A stretch of DNA of 64,000 nt, taken from NCBI GenBank assembly GCA_964304625.1, contig OZ199840.1, positions 1,318,733 through 1,382,732 on the forward strand, in the 5' to 3' direction. The first letter of the stretch is position 1, and each line of letters starts with the position of its first letter. Positions 41,143 to 61,755 of this stretch are shown piece by piece. This stretch comes from Kudoa neothunni (taxonomy: Eukaryota > Animalia > Cnidaria). The translations under genes and the position numbers were made by a program. Under the pieces are notes generated by a model that made no database searches, had not been told where the DNA came from, and was given only the letters and a program-made list of their open reading frames with translations.

Positions 41143-44120
41143 CTAATATTTTCTCTTCTTCATTATCACGACACCAACTATCGCTATCACCAATACTCCA
41201 GCAACCGATGCAATAATTATTCTATAAGTAATTTATCTCATTATTTAATAATGCAAAAATATGTACATTAGTTTTGTTTTTCCACTAAAAATAAATTAAT
41301 TAAAATCAGATCATAATATTATATTTGTTACCCTGAGCTGCTTTTCGCTCCTACAAAATAAAAGATTAAATTAGTTATATAACAAAAAATATACCTTGCT
41401 GTATGTCCAGCACCACCAAATATTTTAGAATCTTGAGCATTGTAAACAGTCAAATGATAATCGTTTCCATCAGGCAAATCATTTATTCTGAACTCTTTAC
41501 AGGTTACGAATGTAGAACATCCATCCACATCAGCTCCCATGCAAGATTTTATAATTGCATTTGACATGATACTACTGTTACGTAACTCCCACTTACATTT
41601 CGATTGGTCATTCATACTAGTTGGAAGATGAGAGTTTATAATGAAATTATTCCCATCGCGAGTAATAATGACTACTATCAATTTAGCAGAGTCAGTTGGA
41701 TTTTTCTTTTGGTGCACCTAATATAAGACTCATTTATAATTAATTTCTCAATGATTATATTTATCTCTATAATTTAATACTTGATTCTATTGTATAATCT
41801 CTTTGAGATGACTTTCCGATTGCGGTGACTAATATTTTATATTCCTTTGTTGCATCATAACCAGAAAATAGTATGGAACTGCAAAGTGGATTCGATGAAC
41901 ATGTGTTTGAATCTGAGTTTCGGTTATTAGCAATACCAGCAAGTTGTAAAACTGAATCTTCCGATGTTGTAGATGTCGCAATTCTAACAATGCTTGATTC
42001 TGTATGACCTAACATGGATGGAAGTTTTTTAGGGGTTTTTTGGCGCTGCTGTAGAAGCAGGTGTGGTGACTCTCGTAACTGCTTGGCAAGTGTAAACGTC
42101 TTTATACTCGTTTCCATTCTTTTCTTTCACAGTATAACTGCAAGTTGCAATTGGATTTACTGCGGATAATTGTGCATTCAATATCAAACCATCTGATTTG
42201 ATCTTATGTGTTATCGTCAATGTTGTTAGATCTAGTTACAATAATTAAAAAATAAAGAGTAAATTTTAAGTTTAATAACCTGTTTTTACATTTTTATACT
42301 CAGTAATTGCATAATCTTTATGTGCAATTACTCTAATATCATATAGGGTATTTGGCTCGAGATCTTCTATTGTTACCTGGTCTCTACACAACCCTCTACA
42401 TGGGTTACCACTGGTGCACTTTGCTGGGAAAAAGGTATTCAATCCCGCGGGACTCACCAAGTATTCACAAGTGGGTTCATTTGTTCTTGTGTTTTCTGCA
42501 GTTCCGCCAACAGCTGTAAAAGAAGCTGTTGTATCTGTCTTTATTGGTGATGTAGTTTGATATGCTTTACCAGTAGCATGTTCTTCAAAAATTACAACGA
42601 ATTAGAATAAAAAATAAATAACTTACTCGTCCTTATGAATATCTTCTCTTTAAACCCTTCTGGATTAGTTATATCTGATTCGATTTCAATCATGTACGCT
42701 TTTCCTGCATCGAGTTGTTGGATCACTAATTTATTGCAATTCGTCTTGCATTTGTTGCTTTGTGAACTATCGCTATCGCATTTTGTATCAGTTAACGAAT
42801 CTTTTCTGAGTTTATCAGCAGGGTAATGTTTGAGAGTGCATGTGCTAAACTTAGGTTCTGCGCCTTGTGTTAGGGTGGTTACATCAAAAGTAACACCCAC
42901 ATTGGTGTAATCAGATAGTAATCCACCAGATGGTTCAGAAATAGCTAATACAACGAATAAACTGAGATAGTAATTAAACGATTACCAAATTTTTTCTGTT
43001 TATAACCTTCCAAATCGTCGCCAGTAGCTCTAATATTATGATGTCTGGTTTGGATTAAAATATCGTAGATTTTTTTACCTGCAATACCGTCTAGCACGAC
43101 GTCTTTACAAGGAGCATAACAGTTTTTACCAGCAACACCACAAACAGACGTATAAGTTTGAGCGTTTTCCCCAGTTTGGCCACTTTTAAGACTGAACAGA
43201 CATATTTCAGATGATGGAGAATTAATGAATTTAATTTCAATTTTATTACTATCTTTAGCAACAATATAATACTGGGGTTCATAAATAGCAATATTTTCCC
43301 TCATATATTGATTTGGCATATTGTAGAAGAAACTGGGATAATTATCGCATCTCATTTCGTAATGTGGTAACAATAAATCAAATTCGACTTTATTATTAAT
43401 ATTCACTGTTTCACAATTATTAACCTTTGTACCTTCTACATACCGAATATCTTTATAATAAATTGGACAATTCACAGGTGTGCAAGTTTTAACATCAATT
43501 TTTAAATTTTTATCGGTAGTGTCCGTTGATACAGTAACTTGAGGATTAGCCAATAAAGCTAAATTTAATTTATTAGTTTATTATTATAATTTCAATTATT
43601 ATACGTATTGCATATCCGAATACTTTTCCGCCCCTATCCTTTCCAGCTGCTATAACAGCTTCAGTAGTAGCATCCACATTTACATATATATATTTAGTTC
43701 TTGGGGAAAGTTTATCATATGTGATTCTATTATCATTTGTCTCACAAGAGACAACACACTTACCATTAGCCTTATCAGTATCATTGGCAGTGCAATTCTC
43801 GATATCTTTAAACTCAGCCGGTGTTGCTGTCGTACCAGCTTTTATGATTTCGGCTTCATTTGATCTCATTACGCGGCATTTTTTCCCAGCAGCATAATCA
43901 GAGCCACCGAGATTGATTTTAATTTTATCTATCCTAGTAGTAGTATCTTGCATAATTTGGTAAGCTAGAGTTTTTGTTGGAGGAGTGGATGTAGGTGAGG
44001 GACTTGGTGCGTTAGTGGCATTAACATTATTTGAAATGAAGAATACTAAATTACGCATTATTATTACAATAAAACCATGTATACACCTAATATATAGTAG
44101 ATAAATCCATCCATTAGCAT
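41143..44120 (-). CDS. Type-I membrane protein with six 4-Cys FN3-like modules, paralogue 1 (roughly 850 aa; two homopolymer frameshifts in this assembly)
   Basis: Spliced signal peptide MLMDGFIYYILVFFISNNVNA; modules ending DKLSPRTKY, DGIAGKKIYDILI, QQLDAGKAYMIEI, EDLEPNTLYDIRV, SGYDATKEYKILV, NDLPDGNDYHLTV; TM IIIASVAGVLVIAIVGVVIM; tail KKRKY*. Confidence 0.85.
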
Positions 44121-44642
44121 AAAAGACTTTATTATAGAACAATCGTTTGTTCGGGATTCACTCAAACGGATTACTCTCATTTGAAAAATTAACGAATAAA
44201 TCATTTTTATAACGAATGAATTGGATGATTTATACAATATTAGGGCTGAATTTTGATATAAACCCCCTAACCTCAAATTAACATAGGATTAACACAATAG
44301 AAAAAAAACTATGAAAAACAACACAAATACAAACCTAAATGATGATAAACTAAAATTTTTTAACGAGGATATAACGCCATCCCATAAATCGAGATTGTGT
44401 TTTCTTCTCCATTGAAATTCATCAGAAATTTATTGATACCATCCATACTGATAGAACCATCTTCATAACCGGAGACGTCCTGTTCGTCGGTGATATTTTA
44501 TATTTCATAGCTCCCCAGGTTCCTTCGATGGTGTTTGTATGAGGCCATGTGGTATTATCCACATATTCCATACCTTGATTTACAGTGAGATGAATATAGA
44601 AAATATGTAGCATTCCATGGCTTTTGATGCAATCGGTTATAA

Positions 44643-47217
44643 CAAGGGTCTCCAAAATGGTCGATAAGTGTTTTAGAGATTCTATTGAATTTTATGGGCT
44701 TTTAAGGTAATGCTTCCCATCTCCAATCTCCCTACTACATTATTTAATTATATTAATTAATACTACCCGTGACACTTTTTTTTATGTTTAAGTTATAATC
44801 AAACGCCACATTTCCTATTTATATGATTCAATGTTTTTCATTTGTGAAGAGATACTTTGTTGCTCATAAAAATTAGTGAATACATTGGCTTTATTTTTCT
44901 TTAATATTAATGATCGTCAGTACTCATTGTTATTAACAATTTATAAAACAATAACCATAGTTTATATTAAATCTATAATAGACTAAGAAGGATAAGTGTA
45001 ATTTTTAAAATTGATTTGAATCGTAAATACAAAAGATACAAAAATAAGTATAATAATCTGAAAATGTTGTTCCAACCCCTGCGGACACTTCAAAAACTCA
45101 TCAAGCGCTCTCGAACTAAGGAACATAATCTTAGGGTAAAGATTAAGATATTCTTAGTAACTTGTAGAGGCAGCTATGAATAAATGTTAGCTTTTCTATA
45201 TATATGTGTAATTTAATCTTAAAGTCTGCCGTTGTATTTATATATGTGCAAAAGTATGTAACTGTAACATACACAGGCGACCTAACTTGGTAGGCCAATT
45301 GAATAAGATTTAGGATGAAAAATAGGTTCATTGTGGTAAATTTTCTAATGTAGTTGTTTTTTGCCAAGATATGAATATAAATATCTGTGTAAATCTACAA
45401 ATTTAAAGAATTTTTCTAAAGACAGTGGCTATTCTCATGTAAACGAATAACTCCTCCGTTATGGATGATATTTCAAATCTGACTACATATTTGAATTTAT
45501 CTATTTTTAATCTAATTTGTCATGAAAAAATTATTTGAAACTTTTAAGAATAAAAATTCAACACTTTGTCCTATTTACACTGTTTACTAATAGTAAACTC
45601 ACATTTTTGAGTCTGATATTATGTAATATAAACATTTTAGTTGAAATAAAACGTAAAAACATTTACTAATAAGTAAAAACTGTTCTTTCTGTGCATTCTT
45701 GTGTCACCCACCATGTCTGAATATGCGAGTGAATCCTATTTGATTGTGGGGCGTTCTATTTCGTGAGACTATTTCTAAGTTTTAAAGAACTTTGAAATAA
45801 CTGATATGTGTAGGACAAGTTTATGTATTATATTCAGTTGTAGAAAAGAAATTTAAGCTTTTGTAAGATATAAAATACCAATCGCATGGAATAAGTCTGA
45901 AAAATGGTGTCATTATTGCATCCTACGAAGCGCCTTTAAATTGATTTGCTCAAACTTCACCTTTTATTAAAAAATATTATTGTACTGAAAAAATTTCGAA
46001 TGTAGTTATCTTGGAGAAATTTTATGGGCCTACAGCTAAACAACCATGGCTAGTGAATAAGTTGATCAATTCTTGATTGGAGTGAAAATTGATTTCTCTG
46101 AACTATTAAAATTACACATTCCTCATTATCAGGAAGCGGATGTTTGCAATCTTACAATTAAATTTTTCAAAAAATTTCAAAATGCTCAAGGATGAATTAA
46201 CTGTTATTTTTACTCCAACATTGTTTATTATAATACTTTGCTACATTTCTTCGTTGGTTCACATTTCAAAGGTCAAAGCAATGGTACCCCAAAAATCGCC
46301 ATTCAAAAATTCCCATTTTATAAATTTACCCATTGAGACACTACCAGAGAAATTAATGCAGAAAATTTGGAACCACCCAGCTTCTTAACAATTGATAAAT
46401 GGGTTTAAATTAAGAAGTATAGGTTTACTCTTAAATTTAAACTCATAGCTTCCTGTACTCACAAATAGGCATCATAAAAAACTTTCTCATACTTCTAACT
46501 AAAGTAAAGAAATTTGTAGGGACAAAACAACGAACATTCCTCGAAATAATGGTACAATCTTATAGATACACACGAAAAGTGGTTTACATCAATGTAAAAT
46601 GGTTTGAATCAAATTAATATCCATTAATTAATGGAAATTTTGTTAAATTAATATTAAAAAATGTTCAGGTAGAAACGTACATGTTTCGTAAATGATTGGA
46701 GAAGATTTATGCTAAGTTAAACTGCATGCGCTGAGACGTATTAAGCTAAAGGTTTCTAACCACCACCGGATATGTTTTTATTTCAACTAAAATGTTCATA
46801 TTACACAATATTAGGCTCAAAAATGCGATTGTACGTATTAAACATTGTAAATAGGGCTGACAAAGTGTTGAATTTTTATTCTTTAAATTTTCAAACAATT
46901 TTTGCATAAAAAATTAGATTAAAAATAGCTAAATTCAAATATGAAGTCAGATTTGAAATATCATCTATAACGGATGAGTTATTCGTTTCCATGAGAATAG
47001 CCACCGCCGTTTCTAATATATTTTGACGTTACATCGTTAATAAAAGCTTTTTTGGGGGTTAATATAATTTTTCATTTTATAATATATTAGAAATAGAATA
47101 TTAATGGGATATATTTCACATATTTTTAATTGTCCCAGCCAAAAAAATGAATATACTCTAATATTTTTAATAAAATCTCTGAAAGGGGTCGACGAAAAAA
47201 AGGTTTGGTGACCCCTG
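44643..47217. mobile_element. hAT element inserted into the Merlin transposase
   Basis: TIRs CAAGGGTCTCCAAAA / TTTGGTGACCCCTG, subterminal GGTCGA at both ends, 8-bp TSD GGTTATAA / TGTTATAA (7/8); removal rejoins the Merlin ORF. Confidence 0.8.
45423..47006 (-). mobile_element. Tc1-like element with long (~150-165 bp) TIRs nested in the hAT
   Basis: 45423-45590 (CAGTGGCTATTCTCATG...) is an inverted repeat of 46838-47006; interior has faint Tc1-like remnants (FWGTI, MQ.ND, RHGG); TA TSD not evident. Confidence 0.7.
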
Positions 47218-47862
47218 TGTTATAATAATCGGTCCAGGGTGAGCGTACGTTTTAATTTTTTGGATAAGATTGTCAGCGGTTCTGTTAGGAAACTCCACAA
47301 AAAACATTTTTCATTCTGACGTCCTTTCTACAAGTCCAAGAACCTATGCTCCATTAACGCCATGCCCTCTGTTATGCTTCACCTTGCCAAATTTAGACAC
47401 ATCAACCTCTACAATTATATTTTCTCCTCTAATGACTATGTCCTCAAAGTTTAAACTATCTGCTACCTACCAGCTGGCGAAGATAATGACAACGATTCGT
47501 AATTGTTTGAGAAGAGTGTCCGATAATTGTGCCCAGGTTAACGGTATTTACACTCAACAACCAGTAATATGATAATTCCAAAAAATGATGTAGTTTAATT
47601 TTCAAATAACTGAAAAATATTGAATCAAAAATAGAAATTTCTTTTCTACACAATTTCGAACAGCATCACCAATTTTGTCGATGTCTAGAATGGTTGGTAC
47701 CATGAAACTTAATAAAGTAATTCGGTGTTTTAAATATAGCAATAGCGGTGAGAATATGGGTGTACTTATCCTCATTGCAAAAAATATTATCAAAAGACTT
47801 CTTTGGGGAATTTATTCGCGACAGACATAACGATGAGTGGTCGCAAACCTCTAAATAGTATA

Positions 47863-48918
47863 CAGTCGAACCCCCTTTATCCAAAAATGTTGGGATCTGG
47901 CATTTTCCTTTCGGATACTGAAATTTCGGGTAAACGAAATTCGGTGAATGCGCGTGTGCGGCGGAAAAATTCTAAGTTGGTTACATACTTTATTTTTCAT
48001 TTTTCAATGTTTGTTTTATATTTTTAAAGAAAATTCTACTATATCTAAGTTATACTAGTGAATACAATGCGAAAACTCTAGTTTAAGGCACACTAGTTCC
48101 AGATCCAATGTAGTCGGCGAACGCATACTACTGATACGTGCGACCTTAACGCCGCTGCGCCACATTAGAATGGTACATTCTAGGTTCTAAAAAAGGACTA
48201 TTATTATTAATTTTTTATAATTTCTTCTCAATACGGATATTGTAGACCCTATTAATAATGATGGTAAGAATAATTAAAGTAATAATGAGGAGTATTTTCT
48301 CAGAATTCTCTTTAACAATATTTAGAATTTAATTTTTAATTAAGATATGTCATATTCCAACAATTTAATATTGTGTAATGATTGTTAAAATTCAATAAGA
48401 CTTAAAAGTGGAGGTGTTATGTGCAAAGACTGATGTATGAACATTATTGAATTTAGTTAATTCCGTGGATAAATTGGTCTAATGAAGTCACTGCTAGTTT
48501 TTGATTAAATAATCCAATAAATTTCATGTTTATACATTATTACTCATAAAGAAATAAAAGAAAGTTTGTCTTTACCAAACATTAATTCGTTCATCATGAA
48601 CATGGTTGCATTTTGAACATAAAATACTATATTATCTACGTTACGTTAATTCTATTAATCCAGCATAAACTAAAATTGAATAAATAACGAACATATGTGT
48701 CTAAAAAATAAATGTAAATGCCATTTTAACCAGACACTAATCCAGACTTGAAGGCATTTTTATCCGAAAATTCTAGCCAAAAGTTGTTTCGGATTGAGGT
48801 TGCTGAAATTTCTGTTAAACGAAATTTTTTCCTCTAGAATATGCACCAATTTCAAATAAATTAAAAAAAATAATTTGGATAGAACGATTTTCGGATAAAA
48901 GGAGGTTCGGTTCGACTG
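47863..48918. mobile_element. pogo/Tigger-like non-autonomous element
   Basis: TA|CAGTCGAACCCCCTTTATCC ... GGATAAAAGGAGGTTCGGTTCGACTG|TA: TIRs with TA target duplication. Confidence 0.85.
48095..48165 (-). mobile_element. Degenerate tRNA-derived SINE-like head inside the pogo element
   Basis: Minus strand GTGGCGCAGCGGCGTTAAGGTCGCAC (A-box-like, resembles the ~15770 element) followed by a weak B-box GTTCG. Confidence 0.3.
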
Positions 48919-48920
48919 TA

Positions 48921-49011
48921 ATTGGAAAGATTAAAGAATAGTCATGTGTTATTGTTTAGTATTTTGAGTGCAATAATCAGGTTTATTATTGTGAGAATAG
49001 TTTCCAATTCA
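48921..49011. repeat. ~90-bp non-coding block also present at 61666-61755, upstream of each surface-protein paralogue
   Basis: TTGGAAAGATTAAAGAATARTCATGTGTTATTGTTTAGTATWTTGAGTGCA is shared, with weaker similarity continuing to TCCRAYTCA. Confidence 0.85.
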
Positions 49012-49260
49012 TCTATCTATATATATATATATAAAGTTGTAGAGTAATGGGTAAGCATACGCCTCACCAAATTGGGCCTTTTCCTCATGCTCGACCTTCC
49101 CGATTTTATCCAAAACTTATTTTACACGATTTTTAAATATTTACTAAATACAGAAAAAACTCAAAAATCATTGCCATAAAATATGACAACAACTGCTTTT
49201 TGGGACTGGATCCTGGATCGGTGGTCGGGCACGCTTATGCTCGTATTGGTTCTCCATTAT
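49012..49260 (+). mobile_element. Helitron-like 5' end (3' end not located)
   Basis: A|TCTATCTATATATATATATATAAAGTTGTA matches the 5' end at 8807; it interrupts the shared block at an A|T site where the 61755 copy is uninterrupted. Confidence 0.5.
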
Positions 49261-50049
49261 TTTAGACCTTTTTAACTATTAAAACATCTTCTATTCAGAT
49301 AATTTCTTTTTTATATTATTCCATTTCATAATATATAATTTTTAAATGGCAATATTTTGAATGAACCATCAATGTTGATAGTTTCGTAATAAACTAACAA
49401 ATTCCAATAGATGGCATGATAATAAAAAAAATGTTTTTTTATTCCTTACATTAAGTTAAAATAATTTGCGATCGTATGAAATAATTTTTAACGGTGTAGG
49501 CACAAGTTAACTCCTTGTTGATGAATATGGTGAGAGTTTTTAGTTATACCACACTCTGACGCTAGGATCTTTATTTTTATGCGGTACAGTGTAATTATCA
49601 AATTTTTGAATTTATTGTGTGTTGTTTGCTATTAATTCTTGTTTTAATGCTATTTTCCACGTGAGATACTATGGTACAAATAACAAATCAACGACAATTT
49701 TATCTTTTTTTCGCTAAACAAGGAGTCCTTAATTACGTTTTTAACTGAAAAGGGACTAATTCACAGTGTACCAAGTAGATGCAAGAATTGTCAGCGAGAT
49801 AACACTCAAAGTGAAAATAACTAAAATAGAACATTCAATAACTCTGCGAACGATCTTTTTGACGATTCATTGGAAAAAATTAATTACATATGCTCAAAGT
49901 TTATTCTATTCTAAATATTATATAAATATTCGTTGTTTTTTTTTAGAAAAAATTGTAGAACTAGTTTATTGTGTCATGTCAACACATTTTTCGGCATTAA
50001 TAATTCGTCGGGGAATAATTCCTCAAAATTAACAATTTCTCAAATATTT

Positions 50050-50842
50050 GAACTTATTTATTTATGGAATGTTGGAGAATTATGAAATAGAACAATTATG
50101 CTCACAAGTATAAGTGGAAAGACCCTTTCGTTTTGGTTTTCGTCTCTTTCAAAAATATGCACAAGAATTTATCATCGACGAGAAAAAATTTGGTGGGTCA
50201 ATCACCATAATAGAAATTAACGAAAGTCTTATGAGAGAAGAGGGAGAATAATTGGGGTCGGTATCTCTAAATGGATCATTGGAGGAATAACGCTTCTGAT
50301 GACTCTTAAGTTCCTAGTGACTCTAATGGCGACGATTCCGAGATTCAATCAATAGGAGAAAGATATGGAAATCGTTCCGATGACCCATGGGTGGTTGGAA
50401 TTTGTCGATGTTCTGATAATGATGATGGCAAACGACCTTTACTCGAGTCAAGGTTTTTTATTGTGGAAACAACCGATAAATACACCCTTAGTAATTTAAT
50501 TCTACAAGAGATCAATTATGGCTCGACGATATTTACAGACAAATGAGAGTGTTACAGAGACTTGAGCATATTCGGTTACAACCACATCCCGCATAAATCA
50601 CTCACAACAATATGTCATCGATGATGGCAATCATACAAATACAGTCAGTTAAAGTCGTTTGGCATCATCTAAAAAACAAAATACTCCGAAATATGAGTGG
50701 TATACCAAGAGCCATGCTTGAATCTTATCTGCATGAACAGTGGATTAGATCCAAATATAGAAATAACTGGGAATTCTTCGAGTTTATTTTTAACTCAATT
50801 TCCAGGATTTATTCTATAAACTCAAATATGACTGAAAATTAA
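50050..50842 (+). mobile_element. Second Merlin/ISXO2-like transposase pseudogene (different family)
   Basis: IIEINESL, DPWVVGICR, FFIVETTDKYTL..LILQEINYGSTIFTDK*ECY, NHSQQYV.DDGNHTN, LESYLHEQWIR, with stops and frameshifts. Confidence 0.8.
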
Positions 50843-51100
50843 TCTTCTTTCTGTTATTGAATTTGTTTTTCTAAATCAATTATCGAATAGACCATTTTTA
50901 ATAGAGTAATATTTTCTTAACCTTATTAGGTGAATATGTATAGAATATTTTTTCGCGTTAAAACTGACGAATAAATGCCGAATTTAAAGGAGCGTTTTAT
51001 TAAAACTAATTTTTCAGTTACAATAAACGATTAAGTGCGAATAATTTTTTTGGACCTTGGAAAAACACTTATATTATGACGTAAAAATTAGTATCTGTAA

Positions 51101-53035
51101 TCTAGATATATAAAATCCTTTGTCTGTCTGTGTGTGTCCACAAGTGCGAATGCGTCATGGAGAAACTTTTTTCAATATAGTTTTTAGTTCGCATTTGAAT
51201 AGATGATACCGTTAATAAAAATCGTTCGTTTACTTAGGAATAAAAATATAATCGATGTCGTTATCAAAAGTAAGCAATTTTCCGACTGTTTACAACAATT
51301 ACCAGATTAAGAGGTACCTGAATAATATTGATGTTAGTTTACTCCAGAGTGATAGAGAATTAGAATGATCTTCCACTCATATATACGAAGAAAATCTGTT
51401 AAATTTGATATGAAATGTTTAAAAAATGTTACATATGCCTGTTCGGAGTAATTTTAAGATAAATAAAAGTATTATCGTTACATTTATAAGAGTTTTTGCA
51501 TTTCCCTTAAAATTTGCAGAATATTACATTTTTTTAAAATATAGATTCATTTTTCAATCATTATAGATACATTTTAAACAAAAAGACTTAAATTATGTGT
51601 TTATTTAAAATAATCTAAGATTATAAGTTGGTTTCATCAAGGAATAATTTGGTAGCTATATAAGCATCCTGAAAACGATGTATGATGTGTGTAGAGTTTT
51701 CAAATAATTAAATTTTTGTGATAACATCTTAAATGAAAATTATGCTCTATTGGAATTCCTGAGATGTGAAAATTTCTATTTTTCAAATATATCGATTAGG
51801 ATTGAAATTATACTCGTCTTTTCGATAAGTTTTTAATCATTTTTTGATTTTCCAAAACTTTCTTGAAAATAGCTGACATCACTAATTCGACAAATTTCCA
51901 TATTTGATGAGACAATTTTTTTAATAATGCTTAAATTCTTAGTAAACTAATTATTCCCTATCCCCAGACCTTAAGGTTAATATTCAAATCAATACATAAT
52001 TTTTTTCGCTAAAAATAATTCATTATGATATAAACGCTGTATGAAAATATTCGACACCGCATTCTATACGTAGTTTAAGAATTTATATCCACAATTACTT
52101 TTGCACAAAATGCAGTCCCCACTCAGTAAGTGTCGTAAGTTAATGCAAAATTATTGGTCTATTTGATCTAACCGATATTTTCGCATAGTTTTCGTTAATC
52201 TAAGAATAGTTCAATACGAAGAAATTTTTTTAAGGTAATCAAACAGTACGTATATTTTTAAAAGGGTGCATTTCTGCGATAAAACCAATTGATATTTAAG
52301 CATTACTGTAATTCTTCAAACCAAAGACACCTTTACATTTTAGATTTAATCTTATTTTTTAAATTAAATTTATATATTTTTGAACCAGTAAATATTTTTG
52401 TTAAAAAGTACGGTTTCATTTATTTAAAAATCAGGAAATTATGTTAACATAATGAATACGTAAGTTACCACTCACAACTTATTAAAACCTCCTTAACACG
52501 CTTTATAAAATTTCAACAAAGGAGTAACAAGTAATATTTTTATTTCTGACGCATTTCAGGCCGATTTTATTTTTTTATCGTTTGTAGATTAATAATAAAT
52601 TTTATAACTAGTAGGATTAATTTTTATCGCAAAATTTTGAAAAGAAGTGAAAGTCCTATTTAAGTTACTTAATGATATTGTTTAGTAAATAAATGAACTT
52701 TAATCGTTAATTACATTTCTCATAAAATTAAAGTCATTATATTTTTGGTCAATAATTAGTAAAATAAACTTAAAAATACTCCTTAATTTCTCTCAATACC
52801 TCTTTTTATATTTGAATGGAAAGTGCGTGCATAATTGTGTTTTTCTAAATCATCACACTGCGAAGATAATGACAAGCTTTAAAATGCAACAATTAAAAGA
52901 GAAAAATAAAATTTACAGGGTTTAACGTGCTAACTAGATTAAATCTAAAATAGAATTTCTCCATTCAAAAATTAAACTAAAAGTTAAAGTTTCCCATCAC
53001 ATAGTACCGGGAAAATCTGGCCATTAGGGGCAGTA
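51101..53035 (+). mobile_element. Probable Helitron-type (DINE/HINE-like) non-autonomous element; right end tentative
   Basis: A|TCTAGATATATAAAATCCTTTGTCTGTCTGTGTGTGTCC start with a (GTCT)/(GT) microsatellite; possible decayed hairpin CCGGGAAAATCTGG near 53008. Confidence 0.4.
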
Positions 53036-53233
53036 TTAGTTTACGCGCGGTTATCGGTTGTTTTGCCACCGTGTATTCATTACTGCGTTACGTCTACATT
53101 AATAACTATTCATAAACGTCAGCAAATCAATCAGATTAATGACATATGAATTAATTGAGTACTGAATATGTCTTGACGAAGATAATTCGTACTTAATATC
53201 ATTTACAAGAGACGTTTTACATTATTGTGAACT

Positions 53234-54622
53234 ATGTTGGTACCTTCGTTATTTTCTTTTTTCTTAGCAATTGTTACCGCTGGTGACAGATTTGATTCGC
53301 TATTTATATTTACCTATTTTGTAAAGAGAGAGCTTTACCTTCATATGATAAAGATGCAGGTCAGCCACCAGCTTGGTTGGGGACTGAGGAACTAAAAAAA
53401 CAGGCTGCCGTAGAAAGATGGTATATTGATAAAGCTGACGCAACTTGTAAACCTTTTACTTATCTTGGGTCTCTTGGAAATTTCAACAACTTTGTTTCAA
53501 GATCTGCCTGCAACGAGCATCGTATATGGCGATAAATTTATTTAAGCCATTAATACTGGAATAGTAAAATTCAAACCTGAAGAACAAGCAGACGCATGTA
53601 AGTTAGAGAAAGCAGACGGAGATTGTAGTCTAGCAGGTGACGAAAGGCTAACGAGGTGGTACTTCAAAAGGGAACCTGTTGAAGGAAAGAAAAACTCTTG
53701 CCACAGCTTCAAATACAATGGTTGTGGTGGAAACGCAAACAACTTTGAATCAAAAAAGGAATGTGAACAAGCTTGTCAAAGTAATTCCTTTATCAATTAA
53801 TGTAGAGTTTAAAGTCAATCAAGATTATAAAAATTATTTTGTAATTACGTTAATAGATAAGGAGAATGGTGAGATAAATGATGAAAGCGATCCTAAAAAA
53901 CTGACTCCAACTCCAAATGAATTCGATTGCAAATTTATACCTGAAGTAAAAACTCACGACCCCCAAATGGGAATTGTTCCTCACAAAGACGGAAACAAAT
54001 GCGTTTATGCTGCTGTTGGAAAGGAGGCCAAGAGAGGATTTTTCAATGATTTACCAACCTGCGTCAAGACTTGCATAAGTATATAATTCAAAATAATAAA
54101 TAATTAATTTATCTCAAATAGAAAATAAAGTTGCAGCTTGCAATGCTGACGGTCCATACCAAGCTCCATCAGATTCTGATGTTACAAGCGGCGCAAAAGA
54201 TTACTTCTACTTCAATAAAACCCTAGCATTATGTTTACCCTTCATGTCGAATACACCAACTGGGACGAACAAGATTGACGATGGTACATTAAACATATTT
54301 AGCTCAGTTGAACTCTGTGCTAGTTTCTGTCCCGCGAGTATACCAATAATTACGAATAAAGTGTGATAATATAAATTAAGCTGCTCATATTGGTCAATTA
54401 ACTGCGGTGGAGGCTTGTAAACTGCCAAAAGTTGGAGAGTCAAATACCGATGATAAATACAAAATTCCTAGATATTATTATGACCACAAGAAAGTATCGT
54501 CTGGATCCGAAAACAAAAAATGCACGGCATTTACTTTTAATGGAAAAGATATGAACCTGAATAATTTCAAAACCGACGAAGATTGCACCAATATCTGTGA
54601 GAATCCTTTGAAACCCGCCTAA
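53234..54622 (+). CDS. Secreted five-domain Kunitz/BPTI-type protein (one domain per exon)
   Basis: Signal peptide MLVPSLFSFFLAIVTA; exons encode RWY..C.PFTYLGSLGNFNNF...C, a canonical C..C..RWYF..C.SFKYNGCGGNANNF..C...C, and three further domains ending F...TCVKTC, NIF...LCASFC, NNF...DCTNIC; phase-1 introns. Confidence 0.92.
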
Positions 54623-55854
54623 TTATACCATCTACTTTTATATTATTAAGTTTAACATATTTATGAACCTTAATATACTGATACTCTTAGTTGCCATTAA
54701 TTATGAGTTTTTATGTCGTCAAAAGTACGCAGAATATCAATTAAAGCATTAATCATAATAGATTTTTATTGAAAAAATTCTATCAATACTTCCTAAAATG
54801 GGGATGAATCAGGACTTATCTCCTAAGGATGCGAAAAATATTGCCCTATAAAACTTTGCATCAAATATATATCCTAATTTTTATTAAATAAATCAATTAA
54901 TAGCCGAGAAAATATATTTTAGGAAATGTACCTGTGAAAAATAAATTATTGTAAAATCGTATTCAAAGCTTAGATTAATCTTCATTTATCTGATGATATT
55001 ACTCCATTATTACTTGCTTAACCGATACAGTTGTTCCAATCATATTTTTAAAAATAAAGAATTAATCAAATAATGAAAATATAACTTATAAGAAATATAT
55101 ATATTAAAATAAAGATTATATATTAATGATCGTAAAGTTGTGGGACGTGTGATTTTAAGCTCGGTTTTTGAAATTTGAATTCGAAGAGGTTAATTTTGTT
55201 CACAGAATGTGAGAAATAAGTAGGGAATGGAATTTTCGATTTCGATCGATTTAACACTCATACTGAGTTTGGGATAAAAAGTGACCCCAGAGAAAAATTC
55301 ACTTCTTAAAAGCTATATTCATCAGCATTAAAAACTCAAATTCATTGTTTTAAATCCACCTTTAAATGAGTTTGGGGTCGTTAGGAATCCAGAATAAATA
55401 ATTATATTATAACATTAATAACTTGACATAATAAATTAATTTAAATATTAACTTTGATATTAAAATCTTTCCAATGTTTTAGACCCTTCTAGGATTTTCT
55501 AGAAGGATCCTGGACGGCTGTGGGCATACCATGACCCGTTGGCCCCATCTTGTCCCATGATGTTCTCTTCGGCCATCGGGTGCGATAATAAGTTTACTAT
55601 AGAATTTATCTGTTTGGGATATATTTGGGATTCAGTTCCTCACTAAGATATTTTAAAAGCCAGACTAATATTAATTCATCCGTAAACATAAAGTTTCCGC
55701 ATTTTTTTATACTCAAGTTTAATAACTGTTTACGTTAGACTTACAATTAAAAACATGAATAATTAATAAATATGGCTAACAATATCTAGAAAATTAGAAA
55801 GAATAAAGCATATGAATTAATATAACTATGCGACGTCACACAAGCTATGAAAAC

Positions 55855-56058
55855 TGTTATAGTTTGGGATTAAGGCCGCGCAAAAGAAAGAGAACTGGAA
55901 TAAAATAGACTAAAGGTAGTGATGGTATTCCTCCCAGTTAAGTCGTGTCTATGTATATCTCCGTGTAGCGTGGGCCCTGCCTCGGTCTCCAACGGGTCGC
56001 CCACCCGGGAACGACTTCCCTCTTTATTGTGAAGGATCGTGATTCTCGGATTATGACA
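55855..56058. mobile_element. Solo LTR, 204 bp
   Basis: Termini TGTTATAGT...ATTATGACA (TG..CA, 7/9 inverted match), perfect 5-bp TSD AAAAC (55850-55854 and 56059-56063), GC-rich interior. Confidence 0.8.
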
Positions 56059-57705
56059 AAAACTAAAAACTCAATAAAATTGTAGAAGGAAACTTCTTTA
56101 TTTATATTTTTTGGGATGGCGCATATTATAAACAGATTAGCCCTATTTAAGTAATAAAATTACTCCGTTACAAACTACCTGATTCAATAATCTATTGAAA
56201 ATGAGCCATTTAATTCATTAGTTTGTTTGAGAATAATCAAGTTCGAAATATATTTTGCCTCGTTCTACTATACTTACAAAACTACTTGCTCAACCAATTA
56301 AACATATGATTCTTTCACAAGATATTTAATTCTAATCACAGTGGACACTGAAAAGCGAAAAATTGATAACGAGTTCCTTGTTTTTAATAAAGATTTGGTT
56401 GAAATGTATTTATTTGTACATACTCGCCCAACGTTGTTTGCCTTATTTATCATCATATCTGTGCAGTACTCAACAAATTATGTATATATTTTTATTAAAT
56501 TCTTTTAAAATAATTTCTTTTAGACTTGTGATCAAATTTTTTGTTATATAAATCTGTCTACGCAAACGTATAACTGTCCACCCCTGAACAAGAAGAAAAT
56601 ATAATGTTTAGTATCATTGAAGGAATTTCAAATGAACACGGCATTGAAAACGTAGCCAAACAGAATCAAATTTCGCGAAAATGAGATTCAAATAAAAGGA
56701 TAAGATGTTTCATTTTCCCAAGAGAGCATGTAACAAACGTTCAACTTGCCACTAAAATGGTATGAAACCTATGTTTAACCCTCATATACCAATATTTTGT
56801 GAAAATTGCATCAAAAATTATAATTAGATAATAATATTTTCCAATTTTTAATATTTTTATCGTTTGGACGGAGAAATTTTTTCGTATAACTACTATTTCT
56901 ATCCTGGGGGCAAAAACAACCCTAAACTCATATAAAGGTGAAGATTGTAGACTCACTACGAGTGTTAAACAAATCAAATTATCTTATTAAAGCTTCTATT
57001 TATTTAGATATACTCAACGTCATCATCTAATTGGGCGGTCGTAAGTTATTAAAAGTTAAATATGTTCAAGAATCAAATCATGATTTTGCGAGCGAATGAA
57101 TAAAATAATTTGAGAATATTTTGTTATGAAAAATATTTAAATTAAATTATATTCTTACAAATAATTGTATAAATGTAGGTCATGCTCGATTTAGATGCAT
57201 ACGAAAATATTTCACTAACATTTTTTATTACATAAATTTATTGAAATAACCGAGTCATAACTATTTGTTTTTGTAAGCTTACCTAATTACGAACAAAAAA
57301 AAATTAATCAGGAAAATCACGTAAGAATGATTAATTAATTGTAATCAATTTATTCATCTAAACTTAATTAATTAAATTGAAATATTCAGAAAATAAATAC
57401 AGATTAAAATTTTAAAGAAAGTAAGTTTGATTAATTTAATAAATCAAATTTTAATAGAAAATTATTTTAAATATATGCATACTATTTTTGTTTACGAATC
57501 GAACTAAGAGAACGAATGCTGCAACAATATATTAAGAATTAACGCCATTGTAATTATAGAGCAAAGAAAAATCAAAAGTTCAATAAAGCGATTGTTCTTT
57601 TTTATATGTAAAATTTATTGTAATATTGTAGAAAGAAGAAAATTATTATTAGGAAAAAATATTAGTAATTCAATTAACTAATAATTAAAATTCAATAATA
57701 ATGAA

Positions 57706-60675
57706 TTAATCCTTTTTCTTCTTCATTATCACGACACCAACTATCGCTATCACCAATACTCCAGCAACCGATGCAATAATTATTCTATAAGTAATTTATT
57801 TCATTATTTATTAATGCAAATATATGTACATTAGTTTTGTTTTTCCACTAAAAATAAATTAATTAAAATCAGATCATAATATTATATTTGTTACCCTGAG
57901 CTGCTTTTCGCTCCTACGAAATAAATGATTAAATTAGTTATATAACAAAAAAATATACCTTGCTGTATGTCAGCACCACCAAATATTTTAGAATCTTGAG
58001 CATTGTAAACAGTCAAATGATAATCGTTTCCATCAGGCAAATCATTTATTCTGAACTCTTTACAGGTTACGAATGTAGAACATCCATCCACATCAGCTCC
58101 CATGCAAGATTTTATAATTGCATTTGACATAATACTACTGTTACGTAATTCCCACTTACATTTCGATTGGTCATTCATGCTAGTTGGAAGATGAGAGTTT
58201 ATAATGAAATTATTCCCATCGCGAGTAATAGTGACTACTATCAATTTAGCAGAGTCGGTTGGATTTTCTTTTGGTGCACCTAATATAAGACTCATTTATA
58301 ATTAATTTCTCAATGATTATATTTATCTCTATAATTTAATACTTGAATCTATTGTATAATCTCTTTGAGATGACTTTCCGATTGCGGTGACTAATATTTT
58401 ATATTCCTTTGTTGCATCATAACCAGAAAATAATATGGAACTGCAAAGTGGATTCGATGAACATGTGTTTGAAGCTGAGTTTCGGTTATTAGCAATACCA
58501 GCAAGTTGTAAAACTGAATCTTCCGATAATGTAGATGTCGCAATTCTAGCAATGTTTGATTCTGTATGACCTAACATGGATGGAAGTTTTTTAGGGGTTT
58601 TTGGTGCTGCTGTAGAAGCAGGTGTGGTGACTCTCGTAACTGCTTGGCAAGTGTAAACGTCTTTATACTCGTTTCCATTCTTCTCTTTCACAGTATAACT
58701 GCAAGTTGCAATTGGATTTACTGCGGATAATTGTGCATTCAATATCAAACCATCTGATTTGATCTTATGTGTTATCGTCAATGTTGTTAGATCTAGTTAC
58801 AATAATTAAAAAATAAAGAGTAAATTTTAAGTTTAATAACCTGTTTTTACATTTTTATACTCAGTGATATCGTAATCTTTGTGTGCAATAACTCTGATAT
58901 CATATAGGGTATTTGGCTCGAGATCTTCTATTGTTACTTGGTCTCTACACAATCCTCTACATGGGTTACCGCTGGTGCACTTTGCTGGGAAAAAGGTATT
59001 CAATCCCGCAGGACTCGCCAAGTATTCACAAGTGGGTTCATTTGTTCTTGTGTTTTCTGCAGTTCCGCCAACAGCTGTAAAAGAAGCTGTTGTATCTGTT
59101 TTTGTTGGAGCAGTAGTTTGATATGCTTTACCGTCAGCTTGTTCTTAATAGTTCAAAATTAATTTAAAGTTAAATTGAGTAACTTACTTGTTCTTATGAA
59201 TATTTTTTCTTTAAAATCAGCCAGATTTGTTATGCCTGCTTCGACTTCAATCATGTACGCTTTTCCTGCATCGAGTTGTTGGATCACTAATTTATCGCAA
59301 GTCGTTTTGCACTTGCTGTCTTGTGAACTATCGCTATCGCATTTTGTATCAGTTAACGAATCTTTTCTGAGTTTATCAGCAGGGTAATGTTTGAGAGTGC
59401 ATGTGCTAAACTTAGGTTCTGCGCCTTGTGTTAGGGTGGTTACATCAAAAGTAACACCCACATTGGTGTAATCAGATAGTAATCCATCAGATGGTTCAGA
59501 AATAGCTAAGACAACGAATAAACTGAGATGGTAATTAAACGATTACCAAATTTTGTCTGTTTATAACCCTCCAAAGCGTCGCCAGCAGCCGCAATATTAT
59601 GATGTCTGGTTTGGATTAAAATGTCGTAGATTTTTTTACCTGCAATACCGTCTAGCACGACATCTTTACAAGGAGCATAACAGTTTTTACCAGCACCACC
59701 ACAAATAGACGTATACGTTTGAGCAACTTCACCAGTTTGGCCACTTTTAAGACTGAACAGACATATTTCAGATGATGGGGAATTGGTGAATTTAATTCCC
59801 ACTTTATTACCATCTTTGGCAACAATATAATACTGTGGTTCATAAATTGCAATATTTTTCTTCATATATTGATTAGGCATGCTGTAGAAGAAACTGGGAT
59901 AGTTTTCGCATCTCATTTCGTAATGTGGTAACAATAAATCAAATTCGACTTTATTATTAGTATTATTTGTATCGCAATTTATACCCTTTGTACCTACTAC
60001 ATACTGAATGTCTTTATAATAAATAGGACAATTCACAGGTGTGCAAGTTGCAGCTTCAAGTTTTAAGTTTTTATCCGTAGAATCCGTTGATACAGTAACT
60101 TGAGGATTAGCCAATAATGCTAAATTTAATTTATTAGTTGATTATTATAATTTTTATTATTTTACGTATCGCATATCCGAATACATTTCCACCATTTTCC
60201 TTTCCAGATGCTAAAACAGCAGTACTACTATCATCCACATTTACGTACACGTATTTGGTTCTTGGAGAAAGTTTATCGTATGTGATTATATTTTCATTAG
60301 TGCCACAATCGACAACACATTTATCATTTCCATGGGTTTGATCGGTGGCTGTACAACTGCTGATATCAATAAATGTAGCTGGTGTTGCCTTTGTTGCAGC
60401 GATTTCGGCCTCATTTGATCTCATTACGCGGCATTTTTTTCCAGCAGCATAATCAGAGCCACCGAGATTGATTTTAATTTTGTCTATCCTAGTAGTAATA
60501 TCTTGCATAATTTGGTAAGATAGAGTTTTTGTTGGAGGAGTGGATGTAGGTGAGGGACTTGGTGCGTTAGTGGCATTAACATTATTTGAAATGAAGAATA
60601 CTAAATTACGCATTATTATTACAATAAAACCATGTATACACCTAATATATAGTAGATGAATCCATCCATTAGCAT
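57706..60675 (-). CDS. Type-I membrane protein with six 4-Cys FN3-like modules, paralogue 2 (one apparent 1-nt deletion near 57970)
   Basis: Same exon structure, signal peptide and TM as 41143-44120; tail KKKKD*. Confidence 0.87.
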
Positions 60676-61665: not shown

Positions 61666-61755
61666 TGGAAAGATTAAAGAATAATCATGTGTTATTGTTT
61701 AGTATATTGAGTGCAGAATCAAAATTCTATTATATTGAGATTAGCATCCGACTCA
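61666..61755. repeat. Second copy of the ~90-bp upstream block (see 48921-49011)
   Basis: Direct sequence similarity. Confidence 0.85.

What the first reader, a model, noticed from the sequence alone, without database searches (positions are those of the whole stretch)
41143..60675. Candidate variant surface-antigen system: mosaic paralogues shaped by segmental gene conversion
The two ~3-kb genes alternate between near-identical tracts (by eye ~98%: 43850-44160, 42770-42940 and most of 41155-42290, introns included) and sharply bounded divergent tracts: 43600-43850 vs 60160-60405 (EIIKAGTTATPAEFKDIENCTANDTDKANGKC vs EIAATKATPATFIDISSCTATDQTHGNDKC), 43400-43520, and 42540-42700, where even the intron is largely unalignable. 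Variation concentrates in membrane-distal domains while cysteines, membrane-proximal domains and the TM are fixed. Such patchwork is the known signature of conversion-driven diversification (Borrelia vlsE, Anaplasma msp2, mosaic trypanosome VSG). An analogous system in this animal is inference.
Basis: partly seen in the sequence, partly recalled or inferred. Interest (0 to 1): 0.85.

Follow-up and report, generated by a model that had tools for sequence, protein, structure and literature searches.

The report
Gene-conversion mosaics in Kudoa surface-protein family
Neighbouring copies of a membrane-protein gene in a tuna-muscle parasite (very probably the myxozoan Kudoa neothunni) have swapped stretches of sequence by gene conversion. 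They belong to an apparently undescribed family of at least 150 such genes, which makes them a credible but unproven candidate for variable surface antigens.

Summary
Genes A (41143-44120) and B (57706-60675), both on the minus strand, are 92.7% identical over the gene body only. Their divergence is strongly patchy, even at near-neutral sites (p<=1e-4).

A third copy, C, lies 7 kb beyond B, and a fourth, D, lies 2.1 Mb away. With these the patchwork becomes a phylogenetic mosaic:
- A groups with B in some segments, A with C in others, and B with C or B with D in others.
- One 1,469-bp stretch of B and C is perfectly identical.

B and C are intact 9-exon genes. B encodes 843 aa with a signal peptide, 28 cysteines in FN3-like modules, a transmembrane segment and a 5-residue basic tail. 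A carries three private frameshifts, and D and E are also broken.

The family has at least 150 loci in a 40-Mb genome whose assembly statistics match Kudoa neothunni. Other pairs in the family also show conversion tracts.

Divergent tracts have high synonymous divergence and pN/pS below 1. They are old sequence, not bursts of positive selection, and no near-identical donor or silent cassette exists.

Interlocus gene conversion in a large, lineage-specific surface family is well supported. A programmed antigenic-variation system is untested. The first stage of this scan noted this family at many other places in the genome.

The parts
57706..60675 (-). Gene B, intact. It has 9 exons: 60675-60642, 60600-60166, 60119-59547, 59505-59188, 59143-58841, 58792-58343, 58279-57959, 57913-57895 and 57784-57706. 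The CDS is 2,532 nt, giving 843 aa.
   Evidence: All introns are GT-AG. Introns 1-7 are phase 1 and intron 8 is phase 2. There is a single terminal stop and 28 Cys.
41143..44120 (-). Gene A, a probable pseudogene with the same 9-exon structure: 44120-44087, 44045-43605, 43558-42986, 42944-42627, 42582-42280, 42231-41781, 41717-41395, 41350-41332 and 41221-41143.
   Evidence: Exons 1-5 are open. Exons 6 and 7 are disrupted by three private 1-nt insertions.
42041..42041 (-). A-specific extra A in an A-run (6 vs 5) in exon 6. It creates an immediate in-frame TAA.
   Evidence: B, C and D all have the shorter run. The translation breaks here.
41705..41705 (-). A-specific extra A (5 vs 4) in exon 7; a frameshift.
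41408..41408 (-). A-specific extra G (GG vs G) in exon 7; a frameshift.
43872..44207 (-). Tract where A matches B (B 60427-60762): upstream element, exon 1, intron 1 and the first third of exon 2. Identity is 95-99%, while C is only 72-79% identical.
   Evidence: The segment tree groups (A,B) with support 0.999.
43768..43870 (-). Hypervariable tract in exon 2 (B about 60329-60425, with a 6-nt in-frame deletion in B). All copies differ here. It corresponds to two family-wide variable loops of the N-terminal module.
   Evidence: A-B identity is 58-67%. pS is 0.4-0.6 and pN/pS 0.39-0.74. The best genomic matches are 82-84%.
43650..43767 (-). Dimorphic tract. A shares one form with C (89-96% in 100-nt windows), and B shares the other form with D.
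   Evidence: The segment tree gives (A,C) 0.975 and (B,D) 0.705.
43218..43344 (-). Tract in exon 3 where B matches C (98-99%) and A differs.
42995..43145 (-). 151-bp tract perfectly identical between A and C (end of exon 3). B differs.
42697..42980 (-). Tract where A matches B (intron 3 and most of exon 4; B about 59258-59541), 92-100% identical. C is 58-75% identical, as distant as D and E.
   Evidence: The segment tree groups (A,B) with support 0.995.
42586..42696 (-). End of exon 4 plus intron 4. This is a dimorphic tract, with A grouping with C and B with D.
   Evidence: Intron 4 differences: A-C 2/43, A-B 16/44. The segment tree gives (A,C) 0.906 and (B,D) 0.788.
57678..59146 (-). 1,469-bp ungapped stretch of B that is 100% identical to copy C (G000:C3:1386806-1388274, beyond the window). 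It covers exons 5-9 and introns 5-8, and ends 28 nt past the stop codon.
   Evidence: 0 mismatches, then 6 mismatches in the next 19 nt.
41149..42578 (-). A's counterpart of the B=C tract. It has 42 differences from B=C that are private to A (about 3%), including the three 1-nt insertions.
44121..44205 (-). Conserved element directly upstream of A's ATG (B: 60676-60760). A related element, with a CCGAAC...CAATTG core, lies upstream of the ATG in most of the 23 family loci aligned.
   Evidence: The promoter or 5'UTR role is inference.
57724..57783 (-). Transmembrane segment of B (20 hydrophobic residues), followed by the tail KKKKD and the stop codon. In A the TM is 41161-41220 and the tail is KKRKY.

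Best explanation
A, B and the neighbouring copy C belong to a very large, lineage-restricted family of single-pass type-I membrane proteins. Each protein has a signal peptide, a Ser/Thr/Pro-rich stalk, FN3-like modules with four cysteines each (28 Cys in B), a TM segment and a 5-residue basic tail. The host organism is the myxozoan fish parasite Kudoa (the assembly matches K. neothunni).

The paralogues are old. Their flanks are unalignable, and synonymous divergence in unconverted tracts is 0.4-0.6. Copies lying 7-16 kb apart in the same orientation, and occasionally a copy 2 Mb away, repeatedly repair or recombine off one another (ectopic, interlocus gene conversion). Tracts of about 0.1-1.5 kb are overwritten, introns included. 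This leaves a patchwork in which each segment has its own nearest relative. A broken copy (A) takes part in these exchanges.

Selection keeps the beta-sandwich scaffold, the cysteines and above all the membrane-proximal module (dN/dS 0.05). A few loops are essentially free to vary (pN/pS about 1).

Shown here:
- the mosaic and its statistics
- the gene models
- the pseudogenes
- family size
- selective constraint
- the FN3-like fold, at moderate confidence.

Inferred:
- The proteins sit on the parasite surface and form a germline-encoded, reshuffled repertoire at the host interface (a contingency-like family).
- The shuffling occurs over evolutionary time rather than by programmed somatic switching.
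For: Mosaic:
- A/B/C site patterns number AB 224, AC 102 and BC 98. They fall in 129 runs against 259 expected (minimum 224 in 10,000 permutations). The longest runs are 51, 14 and 42 sites, against permutation maxima of 20, 11 and 10.
- Segment trees switch between (A,B), (A,C)+(B,D), (B,C)+(A,D) and (B,C), with supports of 0.7-1.0.
- B and C share a 1,469-bp perfect identity with sharp ends.
- The heterogeneity persists at near-neutral sites.

Homology limits:
- Homology is limited to the gene body.
- The only shared flank block, 47868-48902, is a dispersed repeat with at least 46 copies.

Family-wide conversion:
- 53 of 253 pairs exceed all 300 permutations.
- Perfect tracts of 461, 316, 272 and 269 bp occur between copies that are otherwise 76-84% alike.

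Selection:
- dN/dS per exon is 0.05-0.64.
- Divergent tracts have pS 0.23-0.59 and pN/pS 0.29-0.89 across the three tracts tested.
- Loops have pN/pS about 1.1, against about 0.3-0.5 for the scaffold.

Family and fold:
- The four cysteines are invariant in 49 aligned modules.
- The AF2 model has pLDDT 82, and its best structural matches are FN3 domains at Z 5-7.2.

Organism:
- The genome has three chromosomes of 17.15, 12.04 and 11.05 Mb plus an 18.2-kb mitochondrial contig.
- The window's GC is about 30%, and seven of gene A's eight introns are 41-63 nt.
- This matches K. neothunni in PMC12239612: span 40.2 Mb, N50 12.0 Mb, GC 30.41%, median intron 49 bp.
Against: - No expression, localisation or host-recognition data could be obtained.
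- The assembly rests on only about 7x HiFi k-mer coverage. A's three 1-nt insertions, two of them in homopolymers, and the perfect B=C tract have not been checked against reads. QV 48.5 does make three errors in 640 bp very unlikely.
- The organism was identified by matching assembly statistics, not by sequence comparison.
- The site-order permutations do not model rate heterogeneity, so the weaker 'significant' pairs there may only reflect conserved stretches.
- Gene conversion cannot be formally separated from old unequal crossing-over using one genome.
Confidence: 0.75

Rival explanations
1. This is a programmed antigenic-variation system. One or a few copies would be expressed at a time on the parasite surface. 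Segmental conversion from other copies, including pseudogenes such as A, D and E, would create new mosaics during infection to escape fish antibodies.
For: - The host has adaptive immunity, and antigenic variation has been reported in myxozoans with an unknown molecular basis.
- The family has at least 150 loci in a genome with 5,316 predicted genes.
- It forms dense arrays near chromosome ends, for example about 30 genes in the first 460 kb of C3 and clusters at 16.4-16.9 Mb of the 17.15-Mb C1.
- The proteins have type-I surface architecture with variable loops.
- About a quarter of 30 sampled loci are disrupted.
- A pseudogene shares recent tracts with an intact gene.
Against: - No expression site or partial-cassette array exists within 84 kb.
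- Every copy examined has its own conserved upstream element, signal exon and TM.
- The hypervariable tracts are unique, with best genomic matches of 82-84%, so no recent import from an extant donor is visible.
- There is no excess of non-synonymous change.
- A single germline-like assembly cannot show somatic switching.
Confidence: 0.15
2. The mosaics arose from a few old unequal crossovers or partial duplications that created chimeric genes, not from recurrent non-reciprocal conversion. For example, B would be a 5'-A-like/3'-C-like hybrid.
For: B looks like an A-type 5' part joined to a C-type 3' half. All three copies lie in the same orientation within 30 kb.
Against: - An unequal crossover would duplicate the spacer, but the A-B and B-C spacers share only a dispersed repeat.
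- At least nine alternating segments with four different groupings need many events.
- Several tracts are short (110-170 bp) and internal.
- D, which lies 2.1 Mb away on the opposite strand, shares segment types with B.
Confidence: 0.08
3. The pattern is an assembly artefact: uncollapsed haplotypes placed in tandem, or consensus homogenisation between paralogues in a low-coverage assembly.
For: Coverage was only about 7x, the fish-infecting stage is diploid, and haplotypic duplication had to be purged.
Against: - The flanks of A, B and C are unrelated, and a Kunitz-type gene and other sequence lie between the copies.
- Parts of the genes differ by 25-40%, far beyond allelic divergence.
- Analogous tracts occur between loci 20-280 kb apart.
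- The assembly QV is 48.5.
Confidence: 0.03
4. No recombination occurred. The patchwork only reflects uneven selective constraint along a uniformly old duplicate.
For: Constraint does differ strongly between exons; dN/dS ranges from 0.05 to 0.64.
Against: - The heterogeneity is just as strong at four-fold and intronic sites.
- Introns 5 and 6 are identical in all three copies, while intron 4 differs at 36% of positions between A and B.
- The nearest relative changes from segment to segment, which constraint cannot produce.
Confidence: 0.01

Closest known systems
Large families of complete variant-surface genes that recombine ectopically (Plasmodium var/rif/stevor, Giardia VSP)
   Same: - The family has tens to hundreds of full-length, separately promoted genes for single-pass surface proteins.
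- The genes sit in clusters that are partly near chromosome ends.
- They have mosaic ancestry from ectopic recombination or conversion, with pseudogenes mixed in.
- Variable loops sit on a conserved scaffold.
   Different: - No sequence or fold relationship was detected.
- Cysteine content is 3.3%, against more than 10% for VSPs (VSP criteria).
- Mutually exclusive expression and immune recognition are untested.
- The organism is an animal (cnidarian), not a protist.
Cassette-type antigenic variation (Borrelia vlsE, Anaplasma msp2, trypanosome VSG mosaics)
   Same: Segmental, non-reciprocal sequence transfer between paralogues, including pseudogenes, gives sharply bounded mosaic tracts.
   Different: - There is no single expression site and no promoterless partial cassettes.
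- The tracts seen here are germline differences between full genes.
- The variable tracts have no identifiable donor.
Ordinary interlocus gene conversion / concerted evolution in tandem gene families (established population-genetic phenomenon)
   Same: - Near-identical tracts include introns and synonymous sites.
- Homology is bounded by the gene body.
- Tract lengths are 0.1-1.5 kb.
- Exchange is strongest between close, same-orientation copies.
- The phylogeny is incongruent along the gene.
   Different: Nothing in the mechanism differs. What is unusual is the setting: a family of at least 150 orphan surface-protein genes in a 40-Mb parasite genome.
Fibronectin type III domains, especially the disulfide-containing FN3 of class I/II cytokine receptors
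   Same: The predicted module is a 7-strand-type beta sandwich. Its best structural matches are IFNAR1, IL-20R, prolactin-receptor and other FN3 domains at Z 5-7.2, with 76-94 aligned residues. One exon gives a sub-threshold Pfam fn3 hit.
   Different: - Pfam scores only 19 bits against a cut-off of 25, and only for exon 5.
- Foldseek finds nothing at E<=1e-3.
- The invariant four-cysteine pattern and short helical inserts are not those of canonical FN3.
Candidate surface families proposed in the myxozoan Sphaerospora molnari (VSP-like, RIFIN/STEVOR-like, ETRAMP-like; bioRxiv 10.64898/2026.02.11.705288)
   Same: Both are duplicated lineage-specific membrane proteins in a myxozoan, proposed as immune-evasion repertoires. 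Both have a short basic C-terminal tail after the TM.
   Different: - The architecture differs: FN3-like 4-Cys modules rather than CXXC-rich or Plasmodium-like proteins.
- The family here is far larger (at least 150 loci, against 10-27 genes).
- The Kudoa genome paper does not mention it.

Membership tests
Interlocus gene conversion among paralogues | Near-identical tracts that include introns and synonymous sites, embedded in older divergence | tested here: met
   pS is 0.00 in converted tracts against 0.4-0.6 elsewhere. Introns 5 and 6 are identical while intron 4 is 36% different. The dispersion test on near-neutral sites gives p<=1e-4.
Interlocus gene conversion among paralogues | Nearest relative changes along the gene (phylogenetic incongruence), beyond chance | tested here: met
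   129 runs of site patterns against 259 expected, with a permutation minimum of 224.
Interlocus gene conversion among paralogues | Homology confined to the exchanged unit, with flanks not co-duplicated | tested here: met
   Identity collapses within about 50 nt outside the gene. The only shared flank block is a repeat with at least 46 copies.
Cassette-type antigenic variation (vlsE / msp2 / VSG) | Archive of silent, promoterless or partial donor cassettes next to or feeding an expression site | tested here: not met
   With A, B and C masked, no family fragment is found in 84 kb at E<0.49. All 23 aligned loci keep the signal-peptide exon, and most keep the ATG and upstream element.
Cassette-type antigenic variation (vlsE / msp2 / VSG) | Variable region of the expressed gene assembled from identifiable donors | tested here: not met
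   The best genomic matches to the hypervariable tracts of B and A are 82% and 84%.
Cassette-type antigenic variation (vlsE / msp2 / VSG) | Switching during infection; immunodominant surface antigen | not testable with these tools
   No reads or expression data were available.
Variant surface multigene family (var / VSP type) | Large family of complete genes for surface-anchored proteins in a parasite | tested here: met
   At least 150 loci. B is an intact ORF with a signal peptide and TM. The organism is matched to Kudoa neothunni. Surface location itself is inferred from topology.
Variant surface multigene family (var / VSP type) | Mutually exclusive or clonally variant expression | not testable with these tools
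   No transcript data exist for this parasite.
Variant surface multigene family (var / VSP type) | Diversifying selection on exposed parts | tested here: inconclusive
   Loops have pN/pS about 1.1 pooled over 8 independent pairs, but the loops were chosen by amino-acid variability. Divergent tracts have pN/pS 0.29-0.89.
Giardia-type VSP | More than 10% cysteine with many CXXC motifs | tested here: not met
   B has 28 Cys in 843 aa (3.3%). Criteria are as quoted.
Pfam fn3 (PF00041) | Sequence score above the gathering threshold | tested here: not met
   Only exon 5 hits, at 19 bits against a cut-off of 25. The other six pieces gave no fn3 hit.
FN3-like fold | Beta-sandwich superimposable on solved FN3 domains | tested here: inconclusive
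   The model has pLDDT 82. VIA-align gives Z 7.2-5.0, mostly to FN3 domains, but the tool rates Z<8 as middling. Foldseek's best E-value is 0.047.

The most novel reading that the evidence does not exclude
This would be the molecular basis of antigenic variation in a metazoan parasite. Kudoa would carry a repertoire of 150-300 or more FN3-like surface glycoprotein genes, partly subtelomeric. These would be expressed one or a few at a time and continually reshuffled by ectopic gene conversion, with pseudogenes such as A, D and E serving as sequence reservoirs. That would be an animal counterpart of var/VSG built on a new scaffold.
Probability: 0.15. Interest if true: 0.9.

Novelty: new member of a known kind. 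Interest (0 to 1): 0.6.

Why it matters
Myxozoans cause major losses in fisheries and aquaculture. Kudoa causes 'jelly meat' in tuna. Myxozoans persist in hosts with adaptive immunity, and antigenic variation has been reported in them, but no molecular basis is established.

A single orphan family makes up several per cent of the gene count, encodes type-I surface proteins with variable loops, and visibly exchanges segments between copies. That gives researchers a concrete, testable candidate for this open question.

The family may also have been missed. The published annotation was hint-based and RNA-poor, and such a multicopy family could be missed or masked as repeats in that kind of annotation. 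That last point is inference.

Tried and rejected
- **Reads and expression.** A's frameshifts, the B=C tract and expression therefore remain unchecked.
- **Organism.**
  - Nematode SL1, Col_cuticle_N, TTR-52 and arthropod Chitin_bind_4 gave nothing, and the controls were uninformative.
  - HSP70 is at most 78% identical to anything public.
  - I considered the orthonectid Intoshia linei. [quoted passage not shown]
  - ARAGORN found no tRNA in standard mode and only doubtful ones in mitochondrial mode.
- **Homology.**
  - Only 15 hits appeared among 1.8 billion representatives. Of the seven best-placed hits looked up, six are unnamed ENA or Logan fragments and one is an unrelated bacterial repeat protein.
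  - The ESM Atlas gave nothing by features, and only generic Ig/FN3 phage or bacterial models by shape.
- **Positive selection.** I looked per exon, in 30-codon windows, per tract and in loops. None was convincing.
- **Donors and cassettes.** I found none.
- **Shared upstream block.** I tested it as a relic of a larger duplication. It is a dispersed repeat.
- **Literature.** One search was uninformative.
- **Joined protein.** All database searches and the fold were run exon by exon by reference. No joined spliced protein went to any search or fold tool. The exons were joined only inside a script to count length, stops and cysteines.

Full report
**What is at the coordinates**

The window contains one internal duplication relevant here, 41149-44242 versus 57713-60797. 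It is 92.7% identical over 3,104 aligned columns, and the flanks drop to 30-55% identity within about 50 nt. Both copies lie on the minus strand.

Reading the sequence and comparing copies gives a 9-exon gene with GT-AG introns of 41-63 nt plus one of 110 nt. Introns 1-7 are phase 1 and intron 8 is phase 2.
- Exon 1 (34 nt) starts a signal peptide that continues into exon 2.
- Exons 2-7 encode cysteine-containing beta-sandwich modules.
- A 19-nt exon encodes a short linker.
- The last exon encodes a 20-residue TM segment and a five-residue basic tail.

B is intact: 2,532 nt, 843 aa, one terminal stop and 28 cysteines. The joined CDS was built only inside a script, to count these features. Every database search and the structure prediction used single exons by reference.

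**Check of the observation**

- 43849-44148 is 95-100% identical.
- 42769-42948 is 98-100%.
- 41150-42288 is mostly 97-100%.
- 43729-43848 is 58-67%.
- 42559-42648 is 67-70%.

The unevenness is not a by-product of selection. At 752 four-fold-degenerate and intronic sites, the variance/mean of differences per 40 sites is 5.3. The maximum in 10,000 permutations was 2.56. Introns 5 and 6 are identical, while intron 4 differs at 16 of 44 positions.

**More copies turn patchiness into a mosaic**

A search of the whole assembly found further copies:
- C is 89% identical to A and starts 7.3 kb beyond B, about 4.1 kb past the window's end.
- D is 81% identical, 2.1 Mb away on the opposite strand.
- E is 74% identical, 110 kb away.
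- Dozens more copies are at about 70%.

In a five-way alignment the nearest relative changes along the gene:
- A matches B at 95-99% over the upstream element, exon 1 and the start of exon 2, and again over intron 3 and most of exon 4. C is as distant there as D or E, at 58-79%.
- A matches C (89-100%) at 43650-43767, at 42995-43145 (151 bp identical) and through intron 4. In two of these segments B carries the form found in D.
- B matches C at 43218-43344.
- From 3 nt inside intron 4 to 28 nt past the stop codon, B and C are identical for 1,469 ungapped bases. Six mismatches follow in the next 19 nt.

Among sites that differ in A/B/C, the patterns AB, AC and BC (224, 102 and 98 sites) fall in 129 runs. 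The expectation is 259, and no permutation out of 10,000 gave fewer than 224. Segment trees give the alternating groupings supports of 0.7-1.0.

Uneven constraint cannot change which copy is the closest relative. Recombination between paralogues is therefore required.

**Conversion rather than recent duplication or artefact**

Homology stops at the gene body. The spacers hold other sequence; the first stage noted a Kunitz-type gene at 53234-54622. The only shared spacer block, 47868-48902, is a dispersed repeat with at least 46 copies. An unequal crossover would have duplicated the spacer.

Haplotigs would share flanks and would not differ by 25-40% in parts of the gene.

The same signature occurs elsewhere in the family. 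Perfect tracts of 461, 316, 272 and 269 bp occur between copies that are otherwise 76-84% alike and lie 20-280 kb apart. The weaker 'significant' pairs in that test may only reflect conserved stretches, because the permutation ignores rate variation.

**State of the copies**

B and C are open throughout; C's exons 5-9 are identical to B's.

A has three private 1-nt insertions, at 42041, 41705 and 41408. The first creates an immediate stop. D has frameshifts in exons 5 and 7, and E in exon 3. About 8 of 30 sampled loci show some disruption.

The published assembly has QV 48.5, so three errors in 640 bp are very unlikely. Coverage was only about 7x, however, and I could not check reads. If the insertions are real, a pseudogene has recently exchanged sequence with an intact gene.

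**Selection**

Nei-Gojobori estimates give dN/dS by exon:

| Exon | dN/dS |
|---|---|
| 7 (membrane-proximal) | 0.05-0.07 |
| 5 | 0.14-0.20 |
| 3 | 0.18-0.34 |
| 2, 4 and 6 | 0.33-0.64 |

In the sharply divergent tracts, synonymous divergence is high (pS 0.23-0.59) and pN/pS is 0.29-0.89. These tracts are old sequence that escaped homogenisation, not recent bursts of amino-acid change.

In a 49-sequence alignment of the N-terminal module, the four cysteines and the strand residues are invariant or nearly so. Variation and indels concentrate in a few loops. Those loops evolve at pN/pS of about 1.1 against 0.3-0.5 for the scaffold. They were chosen for variability, so this shows freedom to vary, not positive selection.

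Family-wide, variability alternates by exon rather than declining steadily towards the membrane.

**Tests of the antigenic-variation analogy**

- The hypervariable tracts of A and B have no near-identical donor in the genome; the best matches are 84% and 82%.
- With A, B and C masked, no fragment of the family exists in 84 kb around them.
- All 23 aligned loci keep exon 1 and intron 1, and most keep the ATG and a conserved element upstream of it.

The architecture is therefore that of a family of complete genes, as in var or VSP. It is not an expression site fed by silent cassettes, as in vlsE, msp2 or VSG.

**Family and fold**

Either the first or the last module alone finds 150 significant loci on all three chromosomes. 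This is the scoring cap, with 259 and 306 candidates. Dense arrays lie near some chromosome ends, for example about 30 genes in the first 460 kb of C3. Other clusters are internal.

Outside this genome, only 15 weak hits appear among 1.8 billion representative proteins. Six of the seven hits looked up are unnamed ENA or Logan fragments, and the seventh is an unrelated bacterial repeat protein. Pfam gives one sub-threshold fn3 hit.

An AlphaFold model of the exon-2 module (pLDDT 82) is a beta sandwich. Its best matches are FN3 domains of cytokine receptors and adhesion molecules at Z 5-7.2, which is a moderate match.

**Organism**

The assembly has chromosomes of 17.15, 12.04 and 11.05 Mb. It also has an 18.2-kb contig carrying a very divergent cox1. 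The window is about 30% GC, and most introns in this gene are 41-63 nt.

These values match the curated Kudoa neothunni assembly recovered from yellowfin tuna HiFi data. That assembly has three chromosome scaffolds plus a circular mitochondrion, a span of 40.2 Mb, N50 12.0 Mb, GC 30.41% and median intron 49 bp (PMC12239612).

That paper predicts 5,316 proteins from protein hints only and reports 45.6% repeats. It does not contain the words 'gene family', 'surface' or 'orphan'.

A 2026 preprint on Sphaerospora molnari proposes other, smaller surface families as immune-evasion repertoires. It notes that the basis of myxozoan antigenic variation is unknown.

**Verdict**

The mosaic is real, statistically solid and best explained by recurrent interlocus gene conversion among old paralogues of a very large Kudoa-specific family of type-I membrane proteins. 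Functional copies are under purifying selection on the scaffold and have free-varying loops.

A host-interface, contingency-like role is a reasonable inference. Programmed antigenic variation is possible (about 15%) but has no direct support.

Mechanistically this is a known kind of evolution. The family and its setting appear to be new.

Noticed in passing
whole assembly G000 (C1 17,154,348; C2 12,040,071; C3 11,048,340; C4 18,219 bp): The assembly statistics, GC and intron length match the published Kudoa neothunni genome (PMC12239612). That genome was recovered as a contaminant of yellowfin tuna sequencing at about 7x coverage.
   Followed up: yes
window 47868-48902 (and C3:1383393-1384430): This 1-kb block is shared between the A-B and B-C spacers at 88% identity. 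It is a dispersed repeat with at least 46 copies at 77-88% identity on all chromosomes. It is therefore a mobile element, not a relic of the gene duplication.
   Followed up: yes
window 48919-49016 vs 61662-61760: A 98-bp block at 83% identity lies next to the repeat above. Another first-stage note read it as a family regulatory element. Given its neighbour, it may simply be part of a repeat.
   Followed up: partly
about 85 nt upstream of the ATG in A (44121-44205), B (60676-60760) and most of 23 family loci: A conserved element (CCGAAC...CAATTG core) lies directly 5' of the start codon across the family. It may be a shared core promoter or 5'UTR.
   Followed up: partly
window 29007-30297 vs 34490-35733: A second internal duplication in three collinear blocks at 76-83% identity. 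I did not examine it.
   Followed up: no
window 28465-28992 (-): A 175-aa ORF ends in a Cys-rich motif that looks like the C-terminal part of a piggyBac-type transposase. This rests on reading the translation only.
   Followed up: no
window 62043-62152 / 63763-63875; 45425-45651 / 46776-47004; 15837-15973 / 16777-16915: Three pairs of inverted repeats at 82-88% identity lie 0.8-1.7 kb apart. The first is just upstream of gene B and was read by another first-stage note as a Pack-type element. It carries no fragment of this family.
   Followed up: partly
G000:C3:50038-50355, 66772-67089, 122110-122427 and 2805128-2805445: Four copies of the membrane-proximal module give identical scores to the query. 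One lies 2.7 Mb from the other three. This suggests very recent duplication or conversion over long distances.
   Followed up: no
L056 (G000:C4:1-10000): This mitochondrial contig is 43% GC. Its cox1 pieces are highly divergent and interrupted under table 11 (probably TGA read as Trp, though I did not check the stop codons). Standard ARAGORN finds no tRNA. This is consistent with reports of extremely divergent Kudoa mitochondrial genomes.
   Followed up: partly
L031 (Logan SRR33849685 contig, 2,166 bp) and L032 (ENA ERZ795007): Unnamed public contigs encode 41-45% identical relatives of exon 3. In L031 the exon-2 and exon-3 equivalents lie in one 333-aa ORF without the intron. These probably come from other Kudoa-infected samples.
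   Followed up: no
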